The notes beneath the pieces were generated by a model. That model made no database searches, was not told the DNA's origin, and saw only the letters and a program-made list of their open reading frames with translations. A stretch of 33,909 nucleotides of DNA from Bipalium vagum (lineage: Eukaryota): positions 1 through 33,909 of the forward strand of contig JBBMKC010220573.1 in assembly GCA_037834085.1 (NCBI GenBank), in the 5' to 3' direction. The position numbers and the translations under genes were made by a program. Of this stretch, positions 4,400 to 27,560 are shown one piece after another; the stretch's first letter is position 1, and each line of letters opens with the position of its first letter.

Positions 4400-7300
4400 A
4401 TGTCTGTAGTTGAATATGTAAATGATATTCTTTCTTTTTTCTTAAACTTTAAATTTTTTACATATTTTTGTTTATCCGTATCAAGTTAATTAGTTTTTAA
4501 ATGTTATAAAATCAATTAAATACAATAAATTTTAAGTTCATGAATTTTAAATAAATTTATATTCCAACAATGCTTTTTACAGATTGATCTGTGCGAAAAT
4601 GATGTCAATAAAAAGAAACCCATGCCAATTATACAGAATGTTAATGGTTTACAGGCTAACAAATCAAAATTGCAAATTAGACCCAAGACTCAAGCCCTAA
4701 AAGCCATAGGTTTAATTGGATGCAAGTTTTATTAATTATTTATTCTATTACAAAAGGTATAAGTTTGATACGAATGCAATATGGCGATAAAGCTGTTAAA
4801 CAAAATTCAAATATTTCTTCGCTCAACTCTGACTGGAAACAAGGTTAATTTAAATTATCAGTAGACTTATACTTACTGACATTTTGGAATTTGATAGTCT
4901 CATTGAAAAACGTGTTGGGAAGTTCGCTATGGTCTGATAACGAAGATAAAAGTAATAGTTCGAAGCTTTTTCGACACATGTTAGAAGAAACGTTTGAGAA
5001 ATGTTATCAGTGTCCTCGTTTTTCGAATTGCTTTTGTTATTATAAGAAGAAGATGACCCGTATTAATTGGATAAATCATATTCGAAGAGGACATTTGAGA
5101 ATTAAAAGCGATTGGAAAAGAATTTTAAAAAATAACCCCCAAACTGGAATCTCTATGGTATTTGAGATTTTTTGCGTTCTGTGCTCGAAAAACGTTAATG
5201 TGAAGCCTTTAACTCCCAAGGACTTTATTCTTCATATTAAGGAGTAATTTTTTTCAATACTTTTCATCTTATAATTTCCATTTATAAGACTTTGAAATTA
5301 AAAGCAATGAAAAATATTTTGTGAATGTTATGGTAAACCTATAATATTTAAATGTGTTTCACGGAATTACCTATTTCTAGAACGGAATTTTTATTTATTG
5401 AAATAGTTATTTAATTTAGAAATGATATTTATTTTATTATATTGCTGATTAAATCTGAATAATATTTGAATAATAAATATTAAGTTTAAATCAACATGGT
5501 TGCGAGTGGTTTTTATCAATAACTCATTATTTTATCAATCAAATGTTCTATTTACAACTAATAATTAATTTTAATATTTATAACCGATTATATTTTATGG
5601 AAAACTCATTTATATTGATTATTCCAAATTTTGTGATAGGTTATTTCAAATCCCAAGAAAATGGAATAGATTTAGTTCAAAATTATCGAAATTAAGGTAA
5701 CAAAAAAAACTGTTATTAAATATTTACAATGCTACCCAAGTTACGTCATAGTTTTTAATAGCCGTTGTTATTATCAATGAGCAAAATACGTATATTGGGA
5801 ATCCAATGAAGTTAATTTACTTAATGATTCGATGGTGTGCAAATACTTGTTTCTGTATTGAGCAAAGTATCATTGATAAGAGCTCTAATGTGTTAATCAT
5901 ATAAAGTCAAACTAAAGCAGTCGAAAATGAAGAAAGTACAATTCATGAAGAATATCAACTTTCCGTTAAATCTTAAATTTGCACTAAATCATTATTTTAG
6001 TACTCAAATATCTTAAGACGTTATCGTGAAAAAATTGGTATCGAATGAAGATCTAAATCATCGATCAGGAAGAGAAATATCTGTTGGGTGACATTATTTA
6101 CCTTAAGTTACTTAAAGGCTTGGCAGAATTCTTATTTTTGTAATGAACAATAAAATAACTATTCGGGAAAAATTTCTCGAAAATACCACCAAAATGCATA
6201 AAGGAATTCTTTAAAATTTAAATATTTAGTCTAATTTTTTATCATTAAAATGGTAAATTACAAGTCCACGAAAAATGCAAAAGTTACCATCTACCATAAC
6301 TTACCATCACGACGATGATTTCAAAATAATGTAAAAAGAATATTATTCATTGTGAAATGGTAATTTTAACCCAATTTCTTTGAAATTAACATACAAAAAT
6401 TATTGATATATTGATTGTATAATTAATTCATTTATCTTTAGGTCTCACGAACACTTAATGCCTTATACGGAATATTTTGCCTTTTGCCAACGTTGTAACG
6501 TGTGCAACGATAAATCGAAATCGTTCCAGCAAAACCTTTTCCACCGTAAAAATTGTTACTTTGCTATCAAAAAAGATCCAAACGGACCATTTACGGGTAA
6601 CTTTAATCATTGCTTTCGAAATCAACGCAATAAAACAATCGTGTGCTTGGAGTTCGAAGACGATAAGAAAACATTTCAATGTAAATGGAAAACTTGTAAA
6701 GTCACTTGCCATTCTGCCTTTAATTATTGGTCAGTTCGGAAAAAGTTAGGTTTATTTATTTTGTATTAATATTATTGATTTTCTTTTGAATTATAATTAT
6801 TGTGGATATATTTTGATTTAACTGTCGCGCTTAATTTATAAATTGTATCAAATTATTAATTTATTAAAAATTAATAATTCCATAATCTATAATTTTCAAA
6901 GTATTACAAAATATTTTTGAAATTAATGAAATTTTATTAAACAAAGAGAAATATAGCATTTTTAAACGTCAAAGAATTTTTGCAAATCATTGTATATACA
7001 TGGTACTTAAGTTATCTGAGGACATAAGTTTAATATTAATTTTTTATATGATCTTTTAAATGTATTAATATGAAATTTGTTTTTACTAAATTACTAGAAA
7101 AATAATAATTATGGAAAACCAAATCACTCAAAAAACGAAGCGACAAGCTGATCATTTCGATTTAGAAATCGCCAGATTTTTAAAAGTCGCACGAACATTT
7201 ATACATAAAGTACGCCAAGTATGCTATAATGGAACAGTGTGAAAACAACAAAGCATAAGGAAAATTCCAAAAGCTGTGACATGATGAATACAGGTGATTT

Positions 7301-22870: not shown

Positions 22871-25089
22871 AAAAAATTTTTTTTACACCATCTTTTTTTA
22901 TATTTGAACTTTATTAAGTCACTCATTTTTATTTCATAAATATAAATATATAAATAAATATATAATTAATTTTTTATAATTTATATAAATATTAATATAT
23001 ATAATTTCCAAATTATTTTATTAATAATTTCAATCCTATCGCAAAAATAATAAAATTATAATATTATTAATTATATAATAATATTTTAAAATTATATTAT
23101 ATATTAAATCATTCGTTTTGTGGTACAAAAATAAAATTATGAAAGAAAACATCTGCTGACTTCGCTATTTATCATCCCATTTTGCAAATGAATATTTTTA
23201 ATTTTATATATTACAAAAAAAATAATGTGACTTCATTGAGAATAACAACAATATTTAAAATTTTCCCATTTTTCAATGTTACACATTTTCTAATAGAATC
23301 ACAATGATGCAGTAGGAATCATGTAATATTCCCCTATTCGTATCATGGGAAATGAATTTAATTAACAAACTACTAGCGGTATTAAATAACCAAAACATGA
23401 GTGGGGTAATACTAAGGAAACTCTGCATTTTAATGCTATTTTTCTGATACATAGTTCAATGAAAGTCGATGGAAAAGAGCAATAATAATATTGAACCTGC
23501 CCTATAACCGTTCCCTAATACGGAAGATTCATGTAGCTGTATGGTTGCTAAGCCTGAGCAACTTGCTTCATCAGCTCCTGTATGATGACGACGACGACAA
23601 TGATGCTGCTGATGCTGATGACAGACAACTGGGAATTAGGAGTAGAACTGATTTCAAAGGACAGAACGAAAATGAGGTCATTATTTTATAGGATTATTAT
23701 GAATGCAGTATGCTATGGATATTTTATCAAATGGCAAGAGGATTAAAAGAAAATTGATCTCCTCGTAGAGAATAATTTGAAAGCTTGAAAAATGTGAAAA
23801 GATATATTATTTTAATTTCATGATTAATAATCTCCCGATTTAAAAGCCAGAATATAGGCAATAATTATTATTTATTTATTTCATTATATTTTTTTTACGA
23901 GGTTTCTAGAAATATTTGACAATCACTCGATACGATGTCAAAAGGCGAAGGTCAGTCGTTCTTTCGTCTGGAGTACAACAGTAAAATTTTTTTGACTGAC
24001 ACAATCTAAAAGGCACGATTTAATACGTGTCAAATAAAATCTCTAAAATATAAATTAAATAATTTTTTATGCTGAGTAATTTTATGAATTCTTGATTTGA
24101 TTTTTAAAAATTTTTTTTTCATTATATAAAAAAATATCGGCAAAAAAAATTATTAATTAAAAATTAAATTTTATTTTAAATAACTATCTATCTTTACCCC
24201 TTTTCTCATATGACTTCAACTAACTGGGTATGTATAAAATTTTTAAAAAAATTTTCAATTATTCATAATATCCAAATGATAATCTTATTTCTTTCAACCA
24301 TATATTGAGAATCTTCCTATGAAGAGTGAGATAGTAGATAATAATATTATTATTAACAAAATATTAATTAATAGTGGTATGATTGCCAGCCATAGCATTA
24401 TTTAAGGGCAGTATCAGCTGCAGAAAAATTGCAATCTCCCTTGAAGATGTCTAAAAATAATCATACTTTTGCCCAAATAGACGTTTTATTTTTATTAATG
24501 TCTATAGGTTAAAATTTCAGAAGTTCAAGACTTTTTTAATAATTTAATTTTCTGACATCACATTCAAACAAATTTATCAAATCATAAGAGTTCTATTATT
24601 AAATATTAATAAATACATTTAAATTCTAAATATATATAGGGTGTTAGTTAAATATGGGGCAAAAAATTAGGAATGATTTCTTGCATTATTATATGAATAA
24701 TTATATAATAACACCTTTTTAGGTCTTCTCGTTTCAAAGATACACATTTAAAGATTTTCAAAACACAATTAATTTCAATACGCATAATATTTATTTACAT
24801 TTACTTATTTTCAGGAACTTTTGAAAATGATCTCCACCAGCTAATATGCAGGAATCCAATCTTCTCATCATTGAATAACACATTCTTTCGAAAACAGCAG
24901 GAATGTTCCTTATGGAATTGCATCAATTGACTATCCGAATCCTTAAGTCATTTTCATTTTCCATTAGCATTTTATAAATTAACGATTTTAAATAGCCCCA
25001 TAAAAAATTATTCAACGGGATTTAAGTCTGGAGATCGAGCAGGCCATGCATGCGCAATCATGATTGTGAGATTTATTGAAAATTAGTCG

Positions 25090-25137
25090 GGGGATGTAGC
25101 TCAGCAGTTAGATAAGTGCATGCGCATGTGAAAGGTC
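25090..25137 (+). tRNA. 5' 48 nt of a degenerate tRNA-Ala(CGC)-like gene (pseudogene, split)
   Basis: GGGGATGTAGCTCAGCAGTTAGATAAGTGCATGCGCATGTGAAAGGTC: Ala acceptor 5' strand, A-box, CGC at 25123-25125 and AGGTC variable loop. Confidence 0.75.
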
Positions 25138-26112
25138 AAACCGAAAGAAGCCAAATTGATTTCGAAAATAATCCATAATTTTATCAATCTTTCATGGAAC
25201 TTCAATTAGAATAATCAATCAGTGCTGGTTGCTTCGAATTTTCAATTGCTCAATCATCTATCTTTACAAGGCCTATATTTGATGGAGAAATATTAATCTC
25301 TTCAGAACTAGATTGTATTCTATTCAGATCAATGCTCGACACGGCTCACCATTCAAAGGAAGCCGAAGATGTGATGAACCAGAGGAGACTCTGTCCCATG
25401 TTCTGGTGGTTGTAATCAATCGAGAATATTTCAAAACTGTCGTCACAATACCATCCAAGATTATCTCGCCGAAAAAATCAAAGCAAACACTACAGCTAAA
25501 GTATTTTTTCAACACAGAGACCCAATATATCAACTCTTCGCAACGAGTAGATCTAAAAATAGAATTTACCAATCAAAAATATCTTCTCATAGACGCAAAA
25601 TGTTATTTTGAGACTGAAAACATGTTTTGGAATCATGAAAATTATATCAGGCATTATGAAGATCTGTTAAATAAAAATAAAGAAAATTTACCACAATGGA
25701 CTATAATTATGGATATATTTGCCTTTGGATGTTTGGGATCATAGCAAACACGGAATGACGATATTCTCAAAAGCCTACAGTTTTCAAAGCGAAAATCAAC
25801 CGAAATCGAAAAATAATGCGTATCTTCAAACATCAAGTGAAGTGCAAGTCAGTGGAACTTTCATGGAAATGTCGGAAAGCTATCGATGAATCTTTCTGAA
25901 CTAAACGACATAGCTAATTATGATTCATATAGCCAGGAAAAAGAAGAGAAATCTAACTGACCGTGATGAAGAATTAATATAAAAATGTGACAACTGAAAA
26001 TTTTGTGAAAGCTCTTTTTATTTTATTTTTAAAAATGCCATACTAAGCTCACAGAAATGTGCTGATGATTTATGTGCATGTACATATAAAAACTTGCAAA
26101 AAATACCATTTT
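25138..26112 (+). mobile_element. 5'-truncated RLE-type non-LTR retrotransposon (NeSL/R2/R4-related), decayed
   Basis: Zinc-knuckle remnant RRCDEPEETLSHVL. Restriction-like endonuclease RVDL..LLIDAKCYFE..YEDL..FAFGCLGS* with TAG at the conserved W. Frame continues through further stops to about 25960, then a ~150-nt 3' UTR. Confidence 0.85.
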
Positions 26113-26137
26113 GCTCGTTTGAATGCCGGTATCTCCG
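26113..26137 (+). tRNA. 3' 25 nt of the same tRNA-Ala-like gene
   Basis: GCTCGTTTGAATGCCGGTATCTCCG: B-box GTTTGAAT (from GTTCGAAT), and TATCTCC pairs with GGGGATG including G3:U70. TTTT at 26143-26146. Confidence 0.7.
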
Positions 26138-27127
26138 AATAATTTTCAAAAATGATATTTTAAATTTAGTGACCCACGAACATGTCTACTAAAATCTGCT
26201 GGTGCTCCATCATGCATGAACCTCATGAATTTTCTCATTGCCAACGATATATCCTCAATCAACTCAGGTAGCCTATCTTCCAATGAACTGCGGTATAATT
26301 CAGGAGTAAGTGTTCCTGGTAGGATTACAGGTCTGATTAAAAAATCACCCACAACTCAAACTCAAACGTTCAGTGAAAACTTATATTGGAAATAATCTTC
26401 ACGTGTCTCATATGGATTTTCTTCCGGTCATACATTATTATAATAGAAATTTATTTTTGAGAAACTTTCTTCATCGGTAAACAAAATTAGACTCATTAGC
26501 TGAGAATTTTGAGGCAATGTTTGTTTCAGCCATGGATAAAATTCTACTAGTATCTCTGTTAAGAAGTTCTTAAATGCGTTGAATTTTGTATTCGAAAAAC
26601 ATTCATTGTCTCAACATTTTCCAGTCTTATTACCTACATTCAAGGCGTTTGCTATTATTCTAATTGAAGTGAGTGAATCTTCATCTATAATATCACACAT
26701 CTTCAATTTCTATTATTCTTTTTGTTTCGTGAAGATACCAATGAATTCTTTCAAATGTTTTCATATCAGGAAGATGACTTTTTGAAAATCGCTCAACGTA
26801 CAACTCCTTATCCTTTAAAGAATTCTCATTCGCTAACTCATATTAAAAATACATGTCCATCCTTTTGACGTTTGTATAAAGATTCGTGATGAGATTTAGA
26901 CGTATTCTGAGTATTTATTTTATATACATCTACAGATTAATTTTAAATAAGCCTTACTTTTAGAATATTTAAACAAAAATTACTGTTTTTTGATGATACT
27001 AAAGATTTCATCTATGCATTTCCAAATTCATATTGGAAAGGTGTTATGATGTATTTATATATATAAACACCCAAGGAACAAATCCTTAAATTTTTGGCTC
27101 ATGTTTAACTAACACACTATATATATA

Positions 27128-27560
27128 TAGGTTGCGTGAAAAGTTATAAAAACCACAAGTATTAAACAATTTAACAAACAGTATTCCTATTCTATTTTAA
27201 TATAACATTTAAAATTTGTTTGAACCAATCACTTTGTTACTGTTTAGCAAATGTTTGAATTTGATTTGTCATTTATTATTTTTAATATGGAAGAAATTGA
27301 ATATAGTGAAGTCATCATATTTTTGTTCGGAAGGATTAACTGCACCAGAAATTCACAGTAAAATGGTTAAAATATTTTAGAGATCTGAACCCTCATTTTC
27401 TACTGTCCATCAATGGGTTTTGGAGTTCAAATGCCGTCAATTAAATATAGAAGATGATACACGCAGCTGATGTCCTAAAATACCACTAAATTGGAAATCA
27501 TTGAACGAATACATGGAATTTTACAGAGTATGAATAAAGTAAGTATCCGATTTTAAAATG
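27128..27560 (+). mobile_element. 5' half of a mariner related to the 21371-22340 copy
   Basis: MEEIEYSEVIIFL/EGLTAPEIHSKMVKIF/FSTVHQWVLEFKCRQLNIEDDTRS*CPK helix-turn-helix region. Confidence 0.75.

What the first reader, a model, noticed from the sequence alone, without database searches (positions are those of the whole stretch)
25090..26137. tRNA-Ala gene split precisely by an RLE retrotransposon: candidate tRNA-Ala-specific element
Seen: 48 nt of tRNA-Ala (25090-25137) and the missing 25 nt (26113-26137) flank a 975-bp 5'-truncated RLE element in the same orientation. Rejoined they give 73 nt with a pairing acceptor stem. The break lies at the variable-loop/T-arm junction, between the A and B boxes, with no obvious TSD; the 5' T-stem strand is altered, so the 3' junction may be a few nt off. 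Known: RLE clades (R2, R4, NeSL, Utopia) insert sequence-specifically into multicopy RNA genes, and tRNA-targeting families exist; from memory some planarian ones use other tRNAs. Inference: a family targeting tRNA-Ala at this site, possibly undescribed, with a site-specific endonuclease. One copy cannot prove specificity.
Basis: partly seen in the sequence, partly recalled or inferred. Interest (0 to 1): 0.85.

Follow-up and report, generated by a model that had tools for sequence, protein, structure and literature searches.

The report
LINE inserted in tRNA-like mini-LTR
A dead, shortened copy of a site-specific jumping gene (an R2/NeSL-type LINE) sits at a fixed spot in a tRNA look-alike. 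That look-alike is the terminal repeat of another tiny retrotransposon, not a working alanine tRNA gene, so one mobile element specialises in landing inside another.

Summary
Window 25090-25137 and 26117-26137 are two parts of one tRNA-Ala-like sequence, split by a 979-bp 5'-truncated LINE (25138-26116) in the same orientation.

- **The element is site-specific.** All 28 sampled copies and all 100 listed exact junction matches share the same 3' junction. Ten copies have ten different 5' truncation points, all abutting the same target position. Genome-wide, 357 sites are filled and 1235 are empty (controls 0).
- **The target is not a tRNA gene.** It is a 115-bp LTR (TG..CA ends, 5-bp target duplications) of a roughly 360-bp non-coding "Helenus"-type miniature LTR retrotransposon. 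The LTR core is a disabled tRNA-Ala copy: Rfam scores it as tRNA, but ARAGORN finds only a 2-nt anticodon or nothing.
- **In the window it is a solo LTR** (25065-26151) flanked by ATGAT duplications.

Long copies of the LINE carry a Ulp1 protease, RT, CCHC and RLE, an architecture like NeSL. Kojima and Jurka 2015 describe related planarian families that target tRNA-Arg and tRNA-Glu genes. I found no paper describing this target.

This scan had already reached the same reading on other contigs of this genome (s1-733560, s1-739589, s1-730759). It is a new member of a known kind, of moderate interest.

The parts
24923..25059 (-). Left flank: decayed Tc1/mariner-superfamily transposase remnant, the host of the LTR insertion
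   Evidence: Motif level only. Reverse-strand translations read ..WPARSPDLNP.. and ..NFLWGYLKS.., which I take for Tc1/mariner from my own knowledge. Pfam and PDB searches on the short ORFs gave nothing significant.
25060..25064 (.). Left copy of the 5-bp target-site duplication ATGAT of the LTR element
   Evidence: Read. The same pentamer follows the LTR at 26152-26156. Other copies of the LTR or TRIM also have 5-bp duplications.
25065..25089 (+). LTR leader, which starts with TG
   Evidence: LTR positions 1-25. It is conserved at 91-93% in the 40 scored of 2036 first-look candidates and aligned.
25090..25137 (+). 5' part of the tRNA-Ala-like core of the LTR: acceptor, D arm with A box, defective anticodon arm, variable region
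   Evidence: Intact copies score 44-47 bits against Rfam tRNA.
25138..26116 (+). 5'-truncated (979 bp), decayed copy of the site-specific R2-group/NeSL-like LINE: linker end, CCHC/RLE region and 3' UTR
   Evidence: It aligns to positions 4991-6022 of the long copy L067 at 75.6% and is 74-79% identical to 40 or more other copies. Its truncation point is unique among the 10 mapped.
25313..25744 (+). Remnant of the CCHC zinc knuckle plus restriction-like endonuclease ORF; two of the four zinc ligands are lost
   Evidence: ORF. It is 59% identical to L062:5757-6710, which matches the RLE region of R2 structures 9nl2, 9nl3 and 9dou.
26117..26137 (+). 3' part of the tRNA-like core: T-loop/B box remainder, T-stem 3' strand, acceptor 3' strand
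   Evidence: LTR positions 77 onward. 27 other sampled copies and 100 listed genome matches have the same junction.
26138..26151 (+). LTR trailer, about 4 nt shorter than the family consensus
26152..26156 (.). Right copy of the 5-bp target-site duplication ATGAT
   Evidence: Read.
26157..26517 (-). Right flank: continuation of the decayed Tc1/mariner-superfamily transposase remnant
   Evidence: The reverse-strand ORF 26146-26352 reads ..FMHDGAPADFS.., and ORF 26428-26517 reads ..ILFTDEESF... This is motif level only; profile searches were not significant.

Best explanation
Three nested mobile elements lie here.

1. A Helenus-type miniature LTR retrotransposon (TRIM) integrated into an old Tc1/mariner-like copy. 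It made the 5-bp duplication ATGAT and was reduced to a solo LTR (25065-26151). Its 115-bp LTR is built around a disabled tRNA-Ala copy.

2. Later, an R2-group LINE with NeSL-like architecture (N-terminal zinc-binding region, Ulp1-like protease, RT, CCHC knuckle, restriction-like endonuclease) inserted into that LTR by target-primed reverse transcription. The likely steps are these. The element's protein recognises the LTR around the T-stem/B-box. It nicks the bottom strand just 5' of GTTCGAATCC and primes cDNA synthesis from the LINE RNA's 3' end. It stops early, which gives the 5' truncation at element position about 4994 of about 6000. Second-strand cleavage 1-5 nt upstream then removes four target bases.

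3. The family does this at the same LTR position throughout the genome. About 22% of recognisable sites are filled.

Shown here: the nesting, the constant 3' junction, the variable 5' truncation, the domain content and the LTR nature of the target.

Inferred: the nick positions, the order of strand cleavage, which protein domain reads the target, and the order of solo-LTR formation and LINE insertion.
For: **Target is an LTR**
- The head (leader plus tRNA-like 5' part) gave 2036 first-look candidates at 91-93% identity.
- Uninterrupted 115-bp units have unique flanks and 5-bp duplications.
- Full elements have LTR, then TGG.. (a PBS-like site), then 100-130 bp, then a purine tract, then LTR, flanked by 5-bp duplications (TTGAT in L032, GATGT in L049).
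- Rfam scores the core as tRNA at 44-47 bits. ARAGORN gives a 2-nt anticodon or no call.
- The window holds only the two LTR parts and no internal region.

**Site specificity**
- All 28 sampled copies share the junction ..TTTTGTTC|GTTCGAATCC.., followed by the LTR trailer and then unrelated flanks.
- All 100 listed exact genome matches are followed by one of two LTR trailer types.
- The 5' truncation points differ: L067 coordinates about 3420, 3445, 4531, 4546, 4577, 4605, 4738, 4994 (the window), 5014 and 5191. All abut LTR positions 71-75.
- One head-to-tail copy is about 4 kb (L062).
- There are 357 filled and 1235 empty sites at up to 2 mismatches; reversed-pattern controls gave 0.

**LINE identity**
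- Pfam finds Peptidase_C48 and RVT_1 on L067 ORFs.
- The RT piece matches R2 structures at E 1.9e-12, against 4e-3 for L1 ORF2p.
- The C-terminal ORF matches the R2 RLE region at E 8e-6.
Against: - Only about 40 junctions were read in full, and genome counts rest on 23-nt patterns in a fragmented assembly that may hold duplicate contigs.
- Nick positions are inferred from junctions alone.
- One copy (L032) has a 28-bp target duplication instead of a small deletion, so second-strand cleavage is not uniform.
- No intact copy of this family was seen among the best RT matches: the longest open frame at 74% identity or more is 369 aa. Activity and protein function therefore cannot be shown.
- The mariner identity of the flanks rests on motifs only.
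Confidence: 0.85

Rival explanations
1. One reading: the LINE targets genuine tRNA-Ala genes, and the window holds a split tRNA-Ala gene.
For: The core resembles tRNA-Ala: G3:U70, a CGC-like anticodon region, and A and B boxes. NeSL-related families that target tRNA genes are known (PMC4640811).
Against: - The split unit carries the LTR leader and trailer and 5-bp duplications.
- The unit occurs more than 1500 times.
- Its anticodon arm is one base short, so ARAGORN gives a 2-nt anticodon or nothing.
- All junctions read lie in LTR copies.
Confidence: 0.03
2. The LINE reads a tRNA-Ala-type T-arm wherever it occurs. It hits real tRNA-Ala genes too, and the LTR copies dominate only because they outnumber real genes about a hundredfold and insertions in them are not selected against.
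For: The insertion site lies in the most tRNA-like part of the LTR, at the T-stem/B box. Related planarian families target real tRNA genes. With about 130 junctions read, roughly one or fewer hits in real genes would be expected by target abundance alone.
Against: No such copy was seen among 28 sampled and 100 listed junctions. The bases just upstream of the site (..GTGAAGGTC) differ from a canonical tRNA-Ala anticodon-arm end and variable loop. That last point rests on my own knowledge of metazoan tRNA-Ala and was not tested in this genome.
Confidence: 0.1
3. The tRNA-like head and tail are the LINE's own termini, or the head-LINE fragment-tail is a composite SINE-like unit amplified as a whole. 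The short 115-bp units would then be internal-deletion derivatives.
For: Head and tail always accompany the LINE. An RT-deleted head-to-tail copy exists (L062), and R2 is known to form such deletion derivatives (PMC3414825, listed but not read).
Against: - 5'-truncated copies keep a complete head with leader while losing different amounts of LINE 5' sequence, which is the mark of target DNA and not of element DNA.
- The 115-bp unit occurs as paired LTRs around a PBS/PPT core with 5-bp duplications.
- Empty units outnumber filled ones 3.5 to 1.
- Joining head and tail restores a complete T-arm only in the empty units.
Confidence: 0.02

Closest known systems
NeSL-related site-specific LINEs of planarians (LIN15_SM for tRNA-Arg, LIN25_SM for tRNA-Glu) and NeSL-1_TV (tRNA-Pro); Kojima and Jurka 2015, PMC4640811
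   Same: They are RLE-bearing non-LTR retrotransposons that insert at one fixed position inside a tRNA-type sequence, in one orientation. A Ulp1-like protease upstream of RT is described for nematode NeSL and for Utopia-1_TSP, and it is found here.
   Different: The target here is the tRNA-like core of another retrotransposon's LTR, not a tRNA gene. The position is in the T-stem/B box. The tRNA-Arg junctions held in that paper's supplementary file resume upstream of the T-arm, in what looks like the anticodon arm. The target type (Ala-like) is not among those listed. No RT tree was made, so clade membership is untested.
R2 (28S rDNA-specific LINE; solved structures 9nl2, 9nl3, 9dou)
   Same: RT and the C-terminal CCHC plus RLE are recognisably homologous. 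The likely insertion mechanism is the same: target-primed reverse transcription with frequent 5' truncation and small target deletions.
   Different: The target differs. This element has an extra Ulp1-like protease domain. No 5' ribozyme was detected.
Helenus TRIMs, miniature LTR retrotransposons with tRNA-like LTRs (Kojima 2024, PMC10886601)
   Same: The target element has two short LTRs with a tRNA-like core carrying A and B boxes, a PBS-like site and a purine tract, no coding capacity, and many solo LTRs.
   Different: Helenus was reported from six animal phyla that do not include flatworms, and with 4-bp duplications in animals. Here the duplications are 5 bp. The paper does not mention a LINE specialised on Helenus LTRs.
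Tx1L LINE inserting into the Tx1D DNA transposon of Xenopus
   Same: It is a site-specific LINE whose target is a sequence inside another, more abundant transposable element.
   Different: Tx1L carries an APE-type endonuclease (L1 group) and targets a DNA transposon. This element carries an RLE and targets an LTR.

Membership tests
Site-specific RLE non-LTR retrotransposon (R2 group) | RT followed by a C-terminal CCHC knuckle and a PD-(D/E)xK restriction-like endonuclease | tested here: met
   Pfam finds RVT_1 on L067 ORFs. The RT piece matches R2 structures at E 1.9e-12. The C-terminal ORF aligns to the R2 RLE region at E 8e-6. The window copy is 59% identical to that ORF.
Site-specific RLE non-LTR retrotransposon (R2 group) | Same insertion point and orientation in independent copies, with variable 5' truncation | tested here: met
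   All 28 sampled and all 100 listed 3' junctions are the same. Ten distinct truncation points abut one target position. There are 357 filled and 1235 empty sites, with controls at 0.
NeSL clade | Ulp1-like cysteine protease domain upstream of RT, as described for nematode NeSL (PMC4640811) | tested here: met
   Peptidase_C48 scores 21.8 bits against a cut-off of 20.7 on L067:3307-3834(-), upstream of the RT ORFs.
NeSL clade | RT groups with NeSL reference elements in a phylogeny | not testable with these tools
   No Repbase or NeSL reference sequences are on hand. The protein search found a single unnamed relative.
NeSL clade | Target is a spliced-leader exon (classic NeSL-1) | tested here: not met
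   The target is the tRNA-like LTR. NeSL-related families with tRNA targets are, however, on record.
R2 clade proper | Insertion at the conserved 28S rDNA site | tested here: not met
   All junctions lie in the LTR.
Functional tRNA-Ala gene (as the target) | Complete cloverleaf with a 7-nt anticodon loop and a 3-nt anticodon | tested here: not met
   On 8 loci with intact units, ARAGORN gives 'tRNA-???' with a 2-nt anticodon in 4 and no call in 4. It finds nothing in the rejoined window halves. Rfam tRNA is met at 44-47 bits, so the unit is tRNA-derived.
Functional tRNA-Ala gene (as the target) | A gene with its own unrelated flanks, not part of a larger repeat | tested here: not met
   A conserved 25-nt leader and a 17-nt trailer accompany the core in every copy read.
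Helenus TRIM (the target element) | Two short LTRs that carry a tRNA-like sequence with A and B boxes | tested here: met
   Paired LTRs are seen in L032, L045, L049, L028 and L050. Rfam tRNA hits lie inside the LTR.
Helenus TRIM (the target element) | PBS after the 5' LTR and a polypurine tract before the 3' LTR, with no coding capacity | tested here: met
   TGGCGACCAC.. directly follows the 5' LTR, and ..AAAGGAGGGGGA directly precedes the 3' LTR. The internal part is 100-130 bp. Which tRNA primes was not determined.
Helenus TRIM (the target element) | Target-site duplications (4 bp in animals, 5 bp in fungi and plants, per PMC10886601) | tested here: met
   The duplications are 5 bp: TTGAT (L032), GATGT (L049), ACTAG (L051), AAATG (L056), CCTCG (L057), ATACA (L060) and ATGAT (the window). 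This length differs from the one reported for animals.

The most novel reading that the evidence does not exclude
A LINE lineage related to the tRNA-gene-targeting planarian families has moved from tRNA genes onto the tRNA-derived Pol III box of a miniature LTR retrotransposon. It now lives as a parasite of that parasite. It has split the B box in roughly a fifth of all LTR copies, so it may limit the TRIM's own activity. This would be the first described RLE LINE specialised on an LTR retrotransposon's LTR, and the first Helenus-type TRIM from this animal group.
Probability: 0.45. Interest if true: 0.55.

Novelty: new member of a known kind. Interest (0 to 1): 0.45.

Why it matters
- **tRNA annotation.** It shows that "tRNA-targeting" calls for site-specific LINEs can be misleading. 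Here a tRNA look-alike carried by another retrotransposon is the real target, and this bears on tRNA gene annotation in this genome, where well over a thousand tRNA-like hits are LTRs.
- **Target switching.** It adds a target type to the list for RLE LINEs and gives a natural case of target switching within a lineage that elsewhere uses real tRNA genes. That is useful for understanding how these enzymes are re-aimed, a question of practical interest now that R2-type proteins are being engineered for site-specific insertion (papers listed).
- **Element-on-element competition.** With about 22% of target copies filled, it offers a measurable case of one mobile element competing with another.

Tried and rejected
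- ARAGORN found no tRNA in the window or in the rejoined halves.
- Pfam on the window's own RLE ORF gave nothing meaningful. The identity had to come from better copies.
- An Rfam scan of the putative full-length 5' end (L062:2900-3700) for an HDV-like or other ribozyme gave only a chance hit.
- Pfam and PDB searches on the short flank ORFs failed to confirm the Tc1/mariner flanks.
- I tested whether the genome is Schmidtea mediterranea by searching a tRNA-Arg flank printed in the supplement of PMC4640811. There was no match. The printed text may hold reading errors, so this is not conclusive.
- The search for homologous proteins with the C-terminal ORF returned one unnamed 215-aa relative, so it gave no help with naming or cataloguing.
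- The look-up of sequencing runs returned a single run, probably the source sample, with no RNA. Read laying therefore gives continuity only.
I did not try to get those letters another way.
- Counting LINE 3' ends independently of the flank with an internal 23-mer gave 181. That is fewer than the junction count, so the ratio could not be used.
- No RT phylogeny was made, for lack of reference sequences.

Full report
**What is at the coordinates**

The window is AT-rich DNA at about 27% G+C. At 25090-25137 there is a sequence that begins like tRNA-Ala. From 25138 a stretch runs in the same orientation whose ORF (25313-25744) carries a decayed CCHC knuckle and PD..D-x-K endonuclease motifs. A T-loop, T-stem strand and acceptor strand follow near 26117-26137. 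ARAGORN finds no tRNA in the window and none in the rejoined halves. The acceptor stem does pair, including G3:U70.

**The insert is a LINE of the R2 group with NeSL-like architecture**

A DNA search of the window's own genome found 40 or more copies of the 975-bp insert at 73-81% identity, out of 466 first-look candidates.

- Long copies show what the element is. L067 carries, in order, an N-terminal ORF with a CxxC..CxxC motif, a Ulp1-like protease, RT and the C-terminal ORF.
- Peptidase_C48 scores 21.8 bits against a cut-off of 20.7, and RVT_1 is found in two pieces.
- The RT piece matches solved R2 proteins at E 1.9e-12, against 4e-3 for L1 ORF2p.
- The C-terminal ORF of L062 aligns to the CCHC plus RLE region of R2 proteins at E 8e-6. 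The window's ORF is 59% identical to it.
- L062 is a head-to-tail copy of about 4 kb that lacks the RT segment present in L067.
- A Ulp1-like protease upstream of RT is what Kojima and Jurka describe for nematode NeSL and Utopia-1_TSP (PMC4640811).
- I made no RT tree, so "NeSL-like" rests on architecture only.

**The family is site-specific**

- In all 28 sampled copies the LINE ends ..TTTTGTTC and is followed by GTTCGAATCCCGG.., the acceptor strand and one short trailer. After that the flanks are unrelated to one another.
- A genome-wide pattern of junction plus 17 free bases gave 131 exact matches. All 100 listed continue with one of two trailer types.
- On the 5' side, ten copies keep the complete head and join it to different points of the LINE: L067 coordinates about 3420, 3445, 4531, 4546, 4577, 4605, 4738, 4994 (the window), 5014 and 5191.
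- The head always ends at LTR positions 71-75 and the tail always starts at position 77. This means 1-5 target bases are lost; in the window four are lost.
- One fixed 3' junction with nested 5' truncations is the signature of independent target-primed reverse transcription events at one site. It rules out a composite unit amplified as a whole.
- L078, whose RT is only 64% identical in protein to L067's, sits at the same site. The specificity is therefore shared by diverged sublineages.
- Counts with 23-nt patterns at up to 2 mismatches are 357 filled and 1235 empty sites, with 0 for the reversed controls. That is about 22% occupancy. The caveat is a fragmented assembly that may hold duplicate contigs.

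**The target is not a tRNA gene**

- The 75 nt that end at the 5' junction, including 27 nt upstream of the tRNA-like start, gave 2036 first-look candidates. The 40 that were scored are 91-93% identical over the full length.
- In most of them the unit is uninterrupted. It has a 25-nt leader starting with TG, a 72-nt tRNA-like core and a 17-18-nt trailer ending in CA. The flanks are unique and carry 5-bp duplications.
- At this point I looked at earlier notes of this scan. They read the unit as the LTR of a roughly 360-bp miniature LTR retrotransposon of the "Helenus" kind. I tested that reading myself.
- Paired units occur 217-240 bp apart.
- Between them, TGGCGACCAC.. directly follows the first unit and ..AAAGGAGGGGGA directly precedes the second.
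- Whole elements are flanked by 5-bp duplications: TTGAT in L032 and GATGT in L049.
- The core is tRNA-derived (Rfam tRNA, 44-47 bits) but disabled. Its anticodon arm is one base short, and ARAGORN returns a 2-nt anticodon or nothing.
- Helenus was described by Kojima in 2024 from six animal phyla without flatworms, with 4-bp duplications in animals (PMC10886601). This family has 5-bp duplications.

**The window's own structure**

- The window has only the two LTR parts and no internal TRIM region, so this is a solo LTR.
- The LTR spans 25065-26151 and is flanked by ATGAT at 25060-25064 and 26152-26156.
- Outside the LTR, the reverse strand reads like a decayed Tc1/mariner-type transposase (..HDGAPADFS.. 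on one side..WPARSPDLNP..FLWGYLK.. on the other). This rests on motifs I know. Profile searches on the short ORFs were not significant.
- The LTR parts are about 7-9% diverged from typical copies. The LINE part is 21-26% diverged from every other sampled copy. The copy is therefore old and dead.
- A separately assembled 309-nt contig spans the 5' junction exactly. It is probably from the same sample.

**How it most likely works**

By analogy with R2, the protein binds the LTR around the T-stem/B box. It nicks the bottom strand just 5' of GTTCGAATCC and uses the 3' OH to prime cDNA from the 3' end of its own RNA. It often stops early. The top strand is cut 1-5 nt upstream, which explains the small deletions. 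One copy (L032) instead has a 28-bp duplication of LTR positions 77-104. These steps are inferred. Only the junction anatomy is shown. I found no ribozyme at the putative full-length 5' end.

**Comparison with what is known**

- Site-specific RLE LINEs with tRNA targets are on record: NeSL-1_TV (tRNA-Pro) and the planarian LIN15_SM (tRNA-Arg) and LIN25_SM (tRNA-Glu) (junctions).
- Transposons are listed among known LINE targets in the same paper.
- I found no paper describing an RLE LINE aimed at a Helenus LTR or at a tRNA-Ala-type sequence.
- Repbase could not be consulted, and the protein search gave one unnamed relative.
- The same LINE/LTR pair was already reported by this scan on other contigs of this genome (s1-733560, s1-739589, s1-730759). 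My counts (357 filled sites) agree with their "about 300" and "hundreds".

**Verdict**

The claim of specificity is right. The named target is wrong in kind: it is an LTR with a dead tRNA copy, not a tRNA-Ala gene. It is a new member of a known kind.

Noticed in passing
L048 (G000:C88539), at the LINE target position of an LTR copy: The T-arm of this LTR copy is replaced by about 2.5 units of CCCTAA, a telomere-type repeat, exactly where the LINE normally inserts. It could be a template switch or a repair product at a cleaved target, or it could be chance.
   Followed up: no
L036, L044, L045, L055, L042 (LTR copies): Several otherwise intact LTR copies have 9-19-bp deletions around the LINE target site. 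The deletions are bounded by short direct repeats such as TCCCGG or GGT. They may be scars of cleavage without insertion, ordinary slippage, or inherited subfamily variants. They were not counted genome-wide.
   Followed up: no
L032:1720-2094 (G000:C160434): A 233-bp LINE 3' fragment sits in the 3' LTR of a full TRIM, with LTR positions 77-104 present on both sides. This is a 28-bp target duplication instead of the usual 1-5-bp deletion.
   Followed up: partly
L062:2974-7050 (G000:C214219): This head-to-tail LINE copy of about 4 kb keeps the N-terminal and protease region and the RLE region but lacks the 2.4-kb RT segment present in L067. It may be an internally deleted non-autonomous derivative, like the short deleted forms known for R2.
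   Followed up: partly
G000:C203645:1621-2238 (-): A related LINE lineage (59% protein identity in the RT piece) has an uninterrupted open frame of 1223 aa, and several more distant ones have frames of 950-1320 aa. Their targets are unknown. The sequences could not be fetched.
   Followed up: no
genome-wide; listed matches: The filled sites fall into two LTR subfamilies with different trailers: about three quarters have ..CTCCGATTAATTTTC and about one quarter have ..GTCTCCAATTTATTTGA. The LINE uses both.
   Followed up: partly
L025/L069 (G000:C211850): Here the LTR head is cut short at about position 63, and an (ATAAATAA)n-type simple repeat of several hundred bp lies between it and the LINE body.
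   Followed up: no
window 27216-27380 (+): A short + strand ORF reads ..SEGLTAPEIHSKMVKIF, which resembles the N-terminal helix-turn-helix region of mariner-type transposases (from my own knowledge). It may belong to a second, oppositely oriented transposon remnant. Pfam gave nothing.
   Followed up: partly
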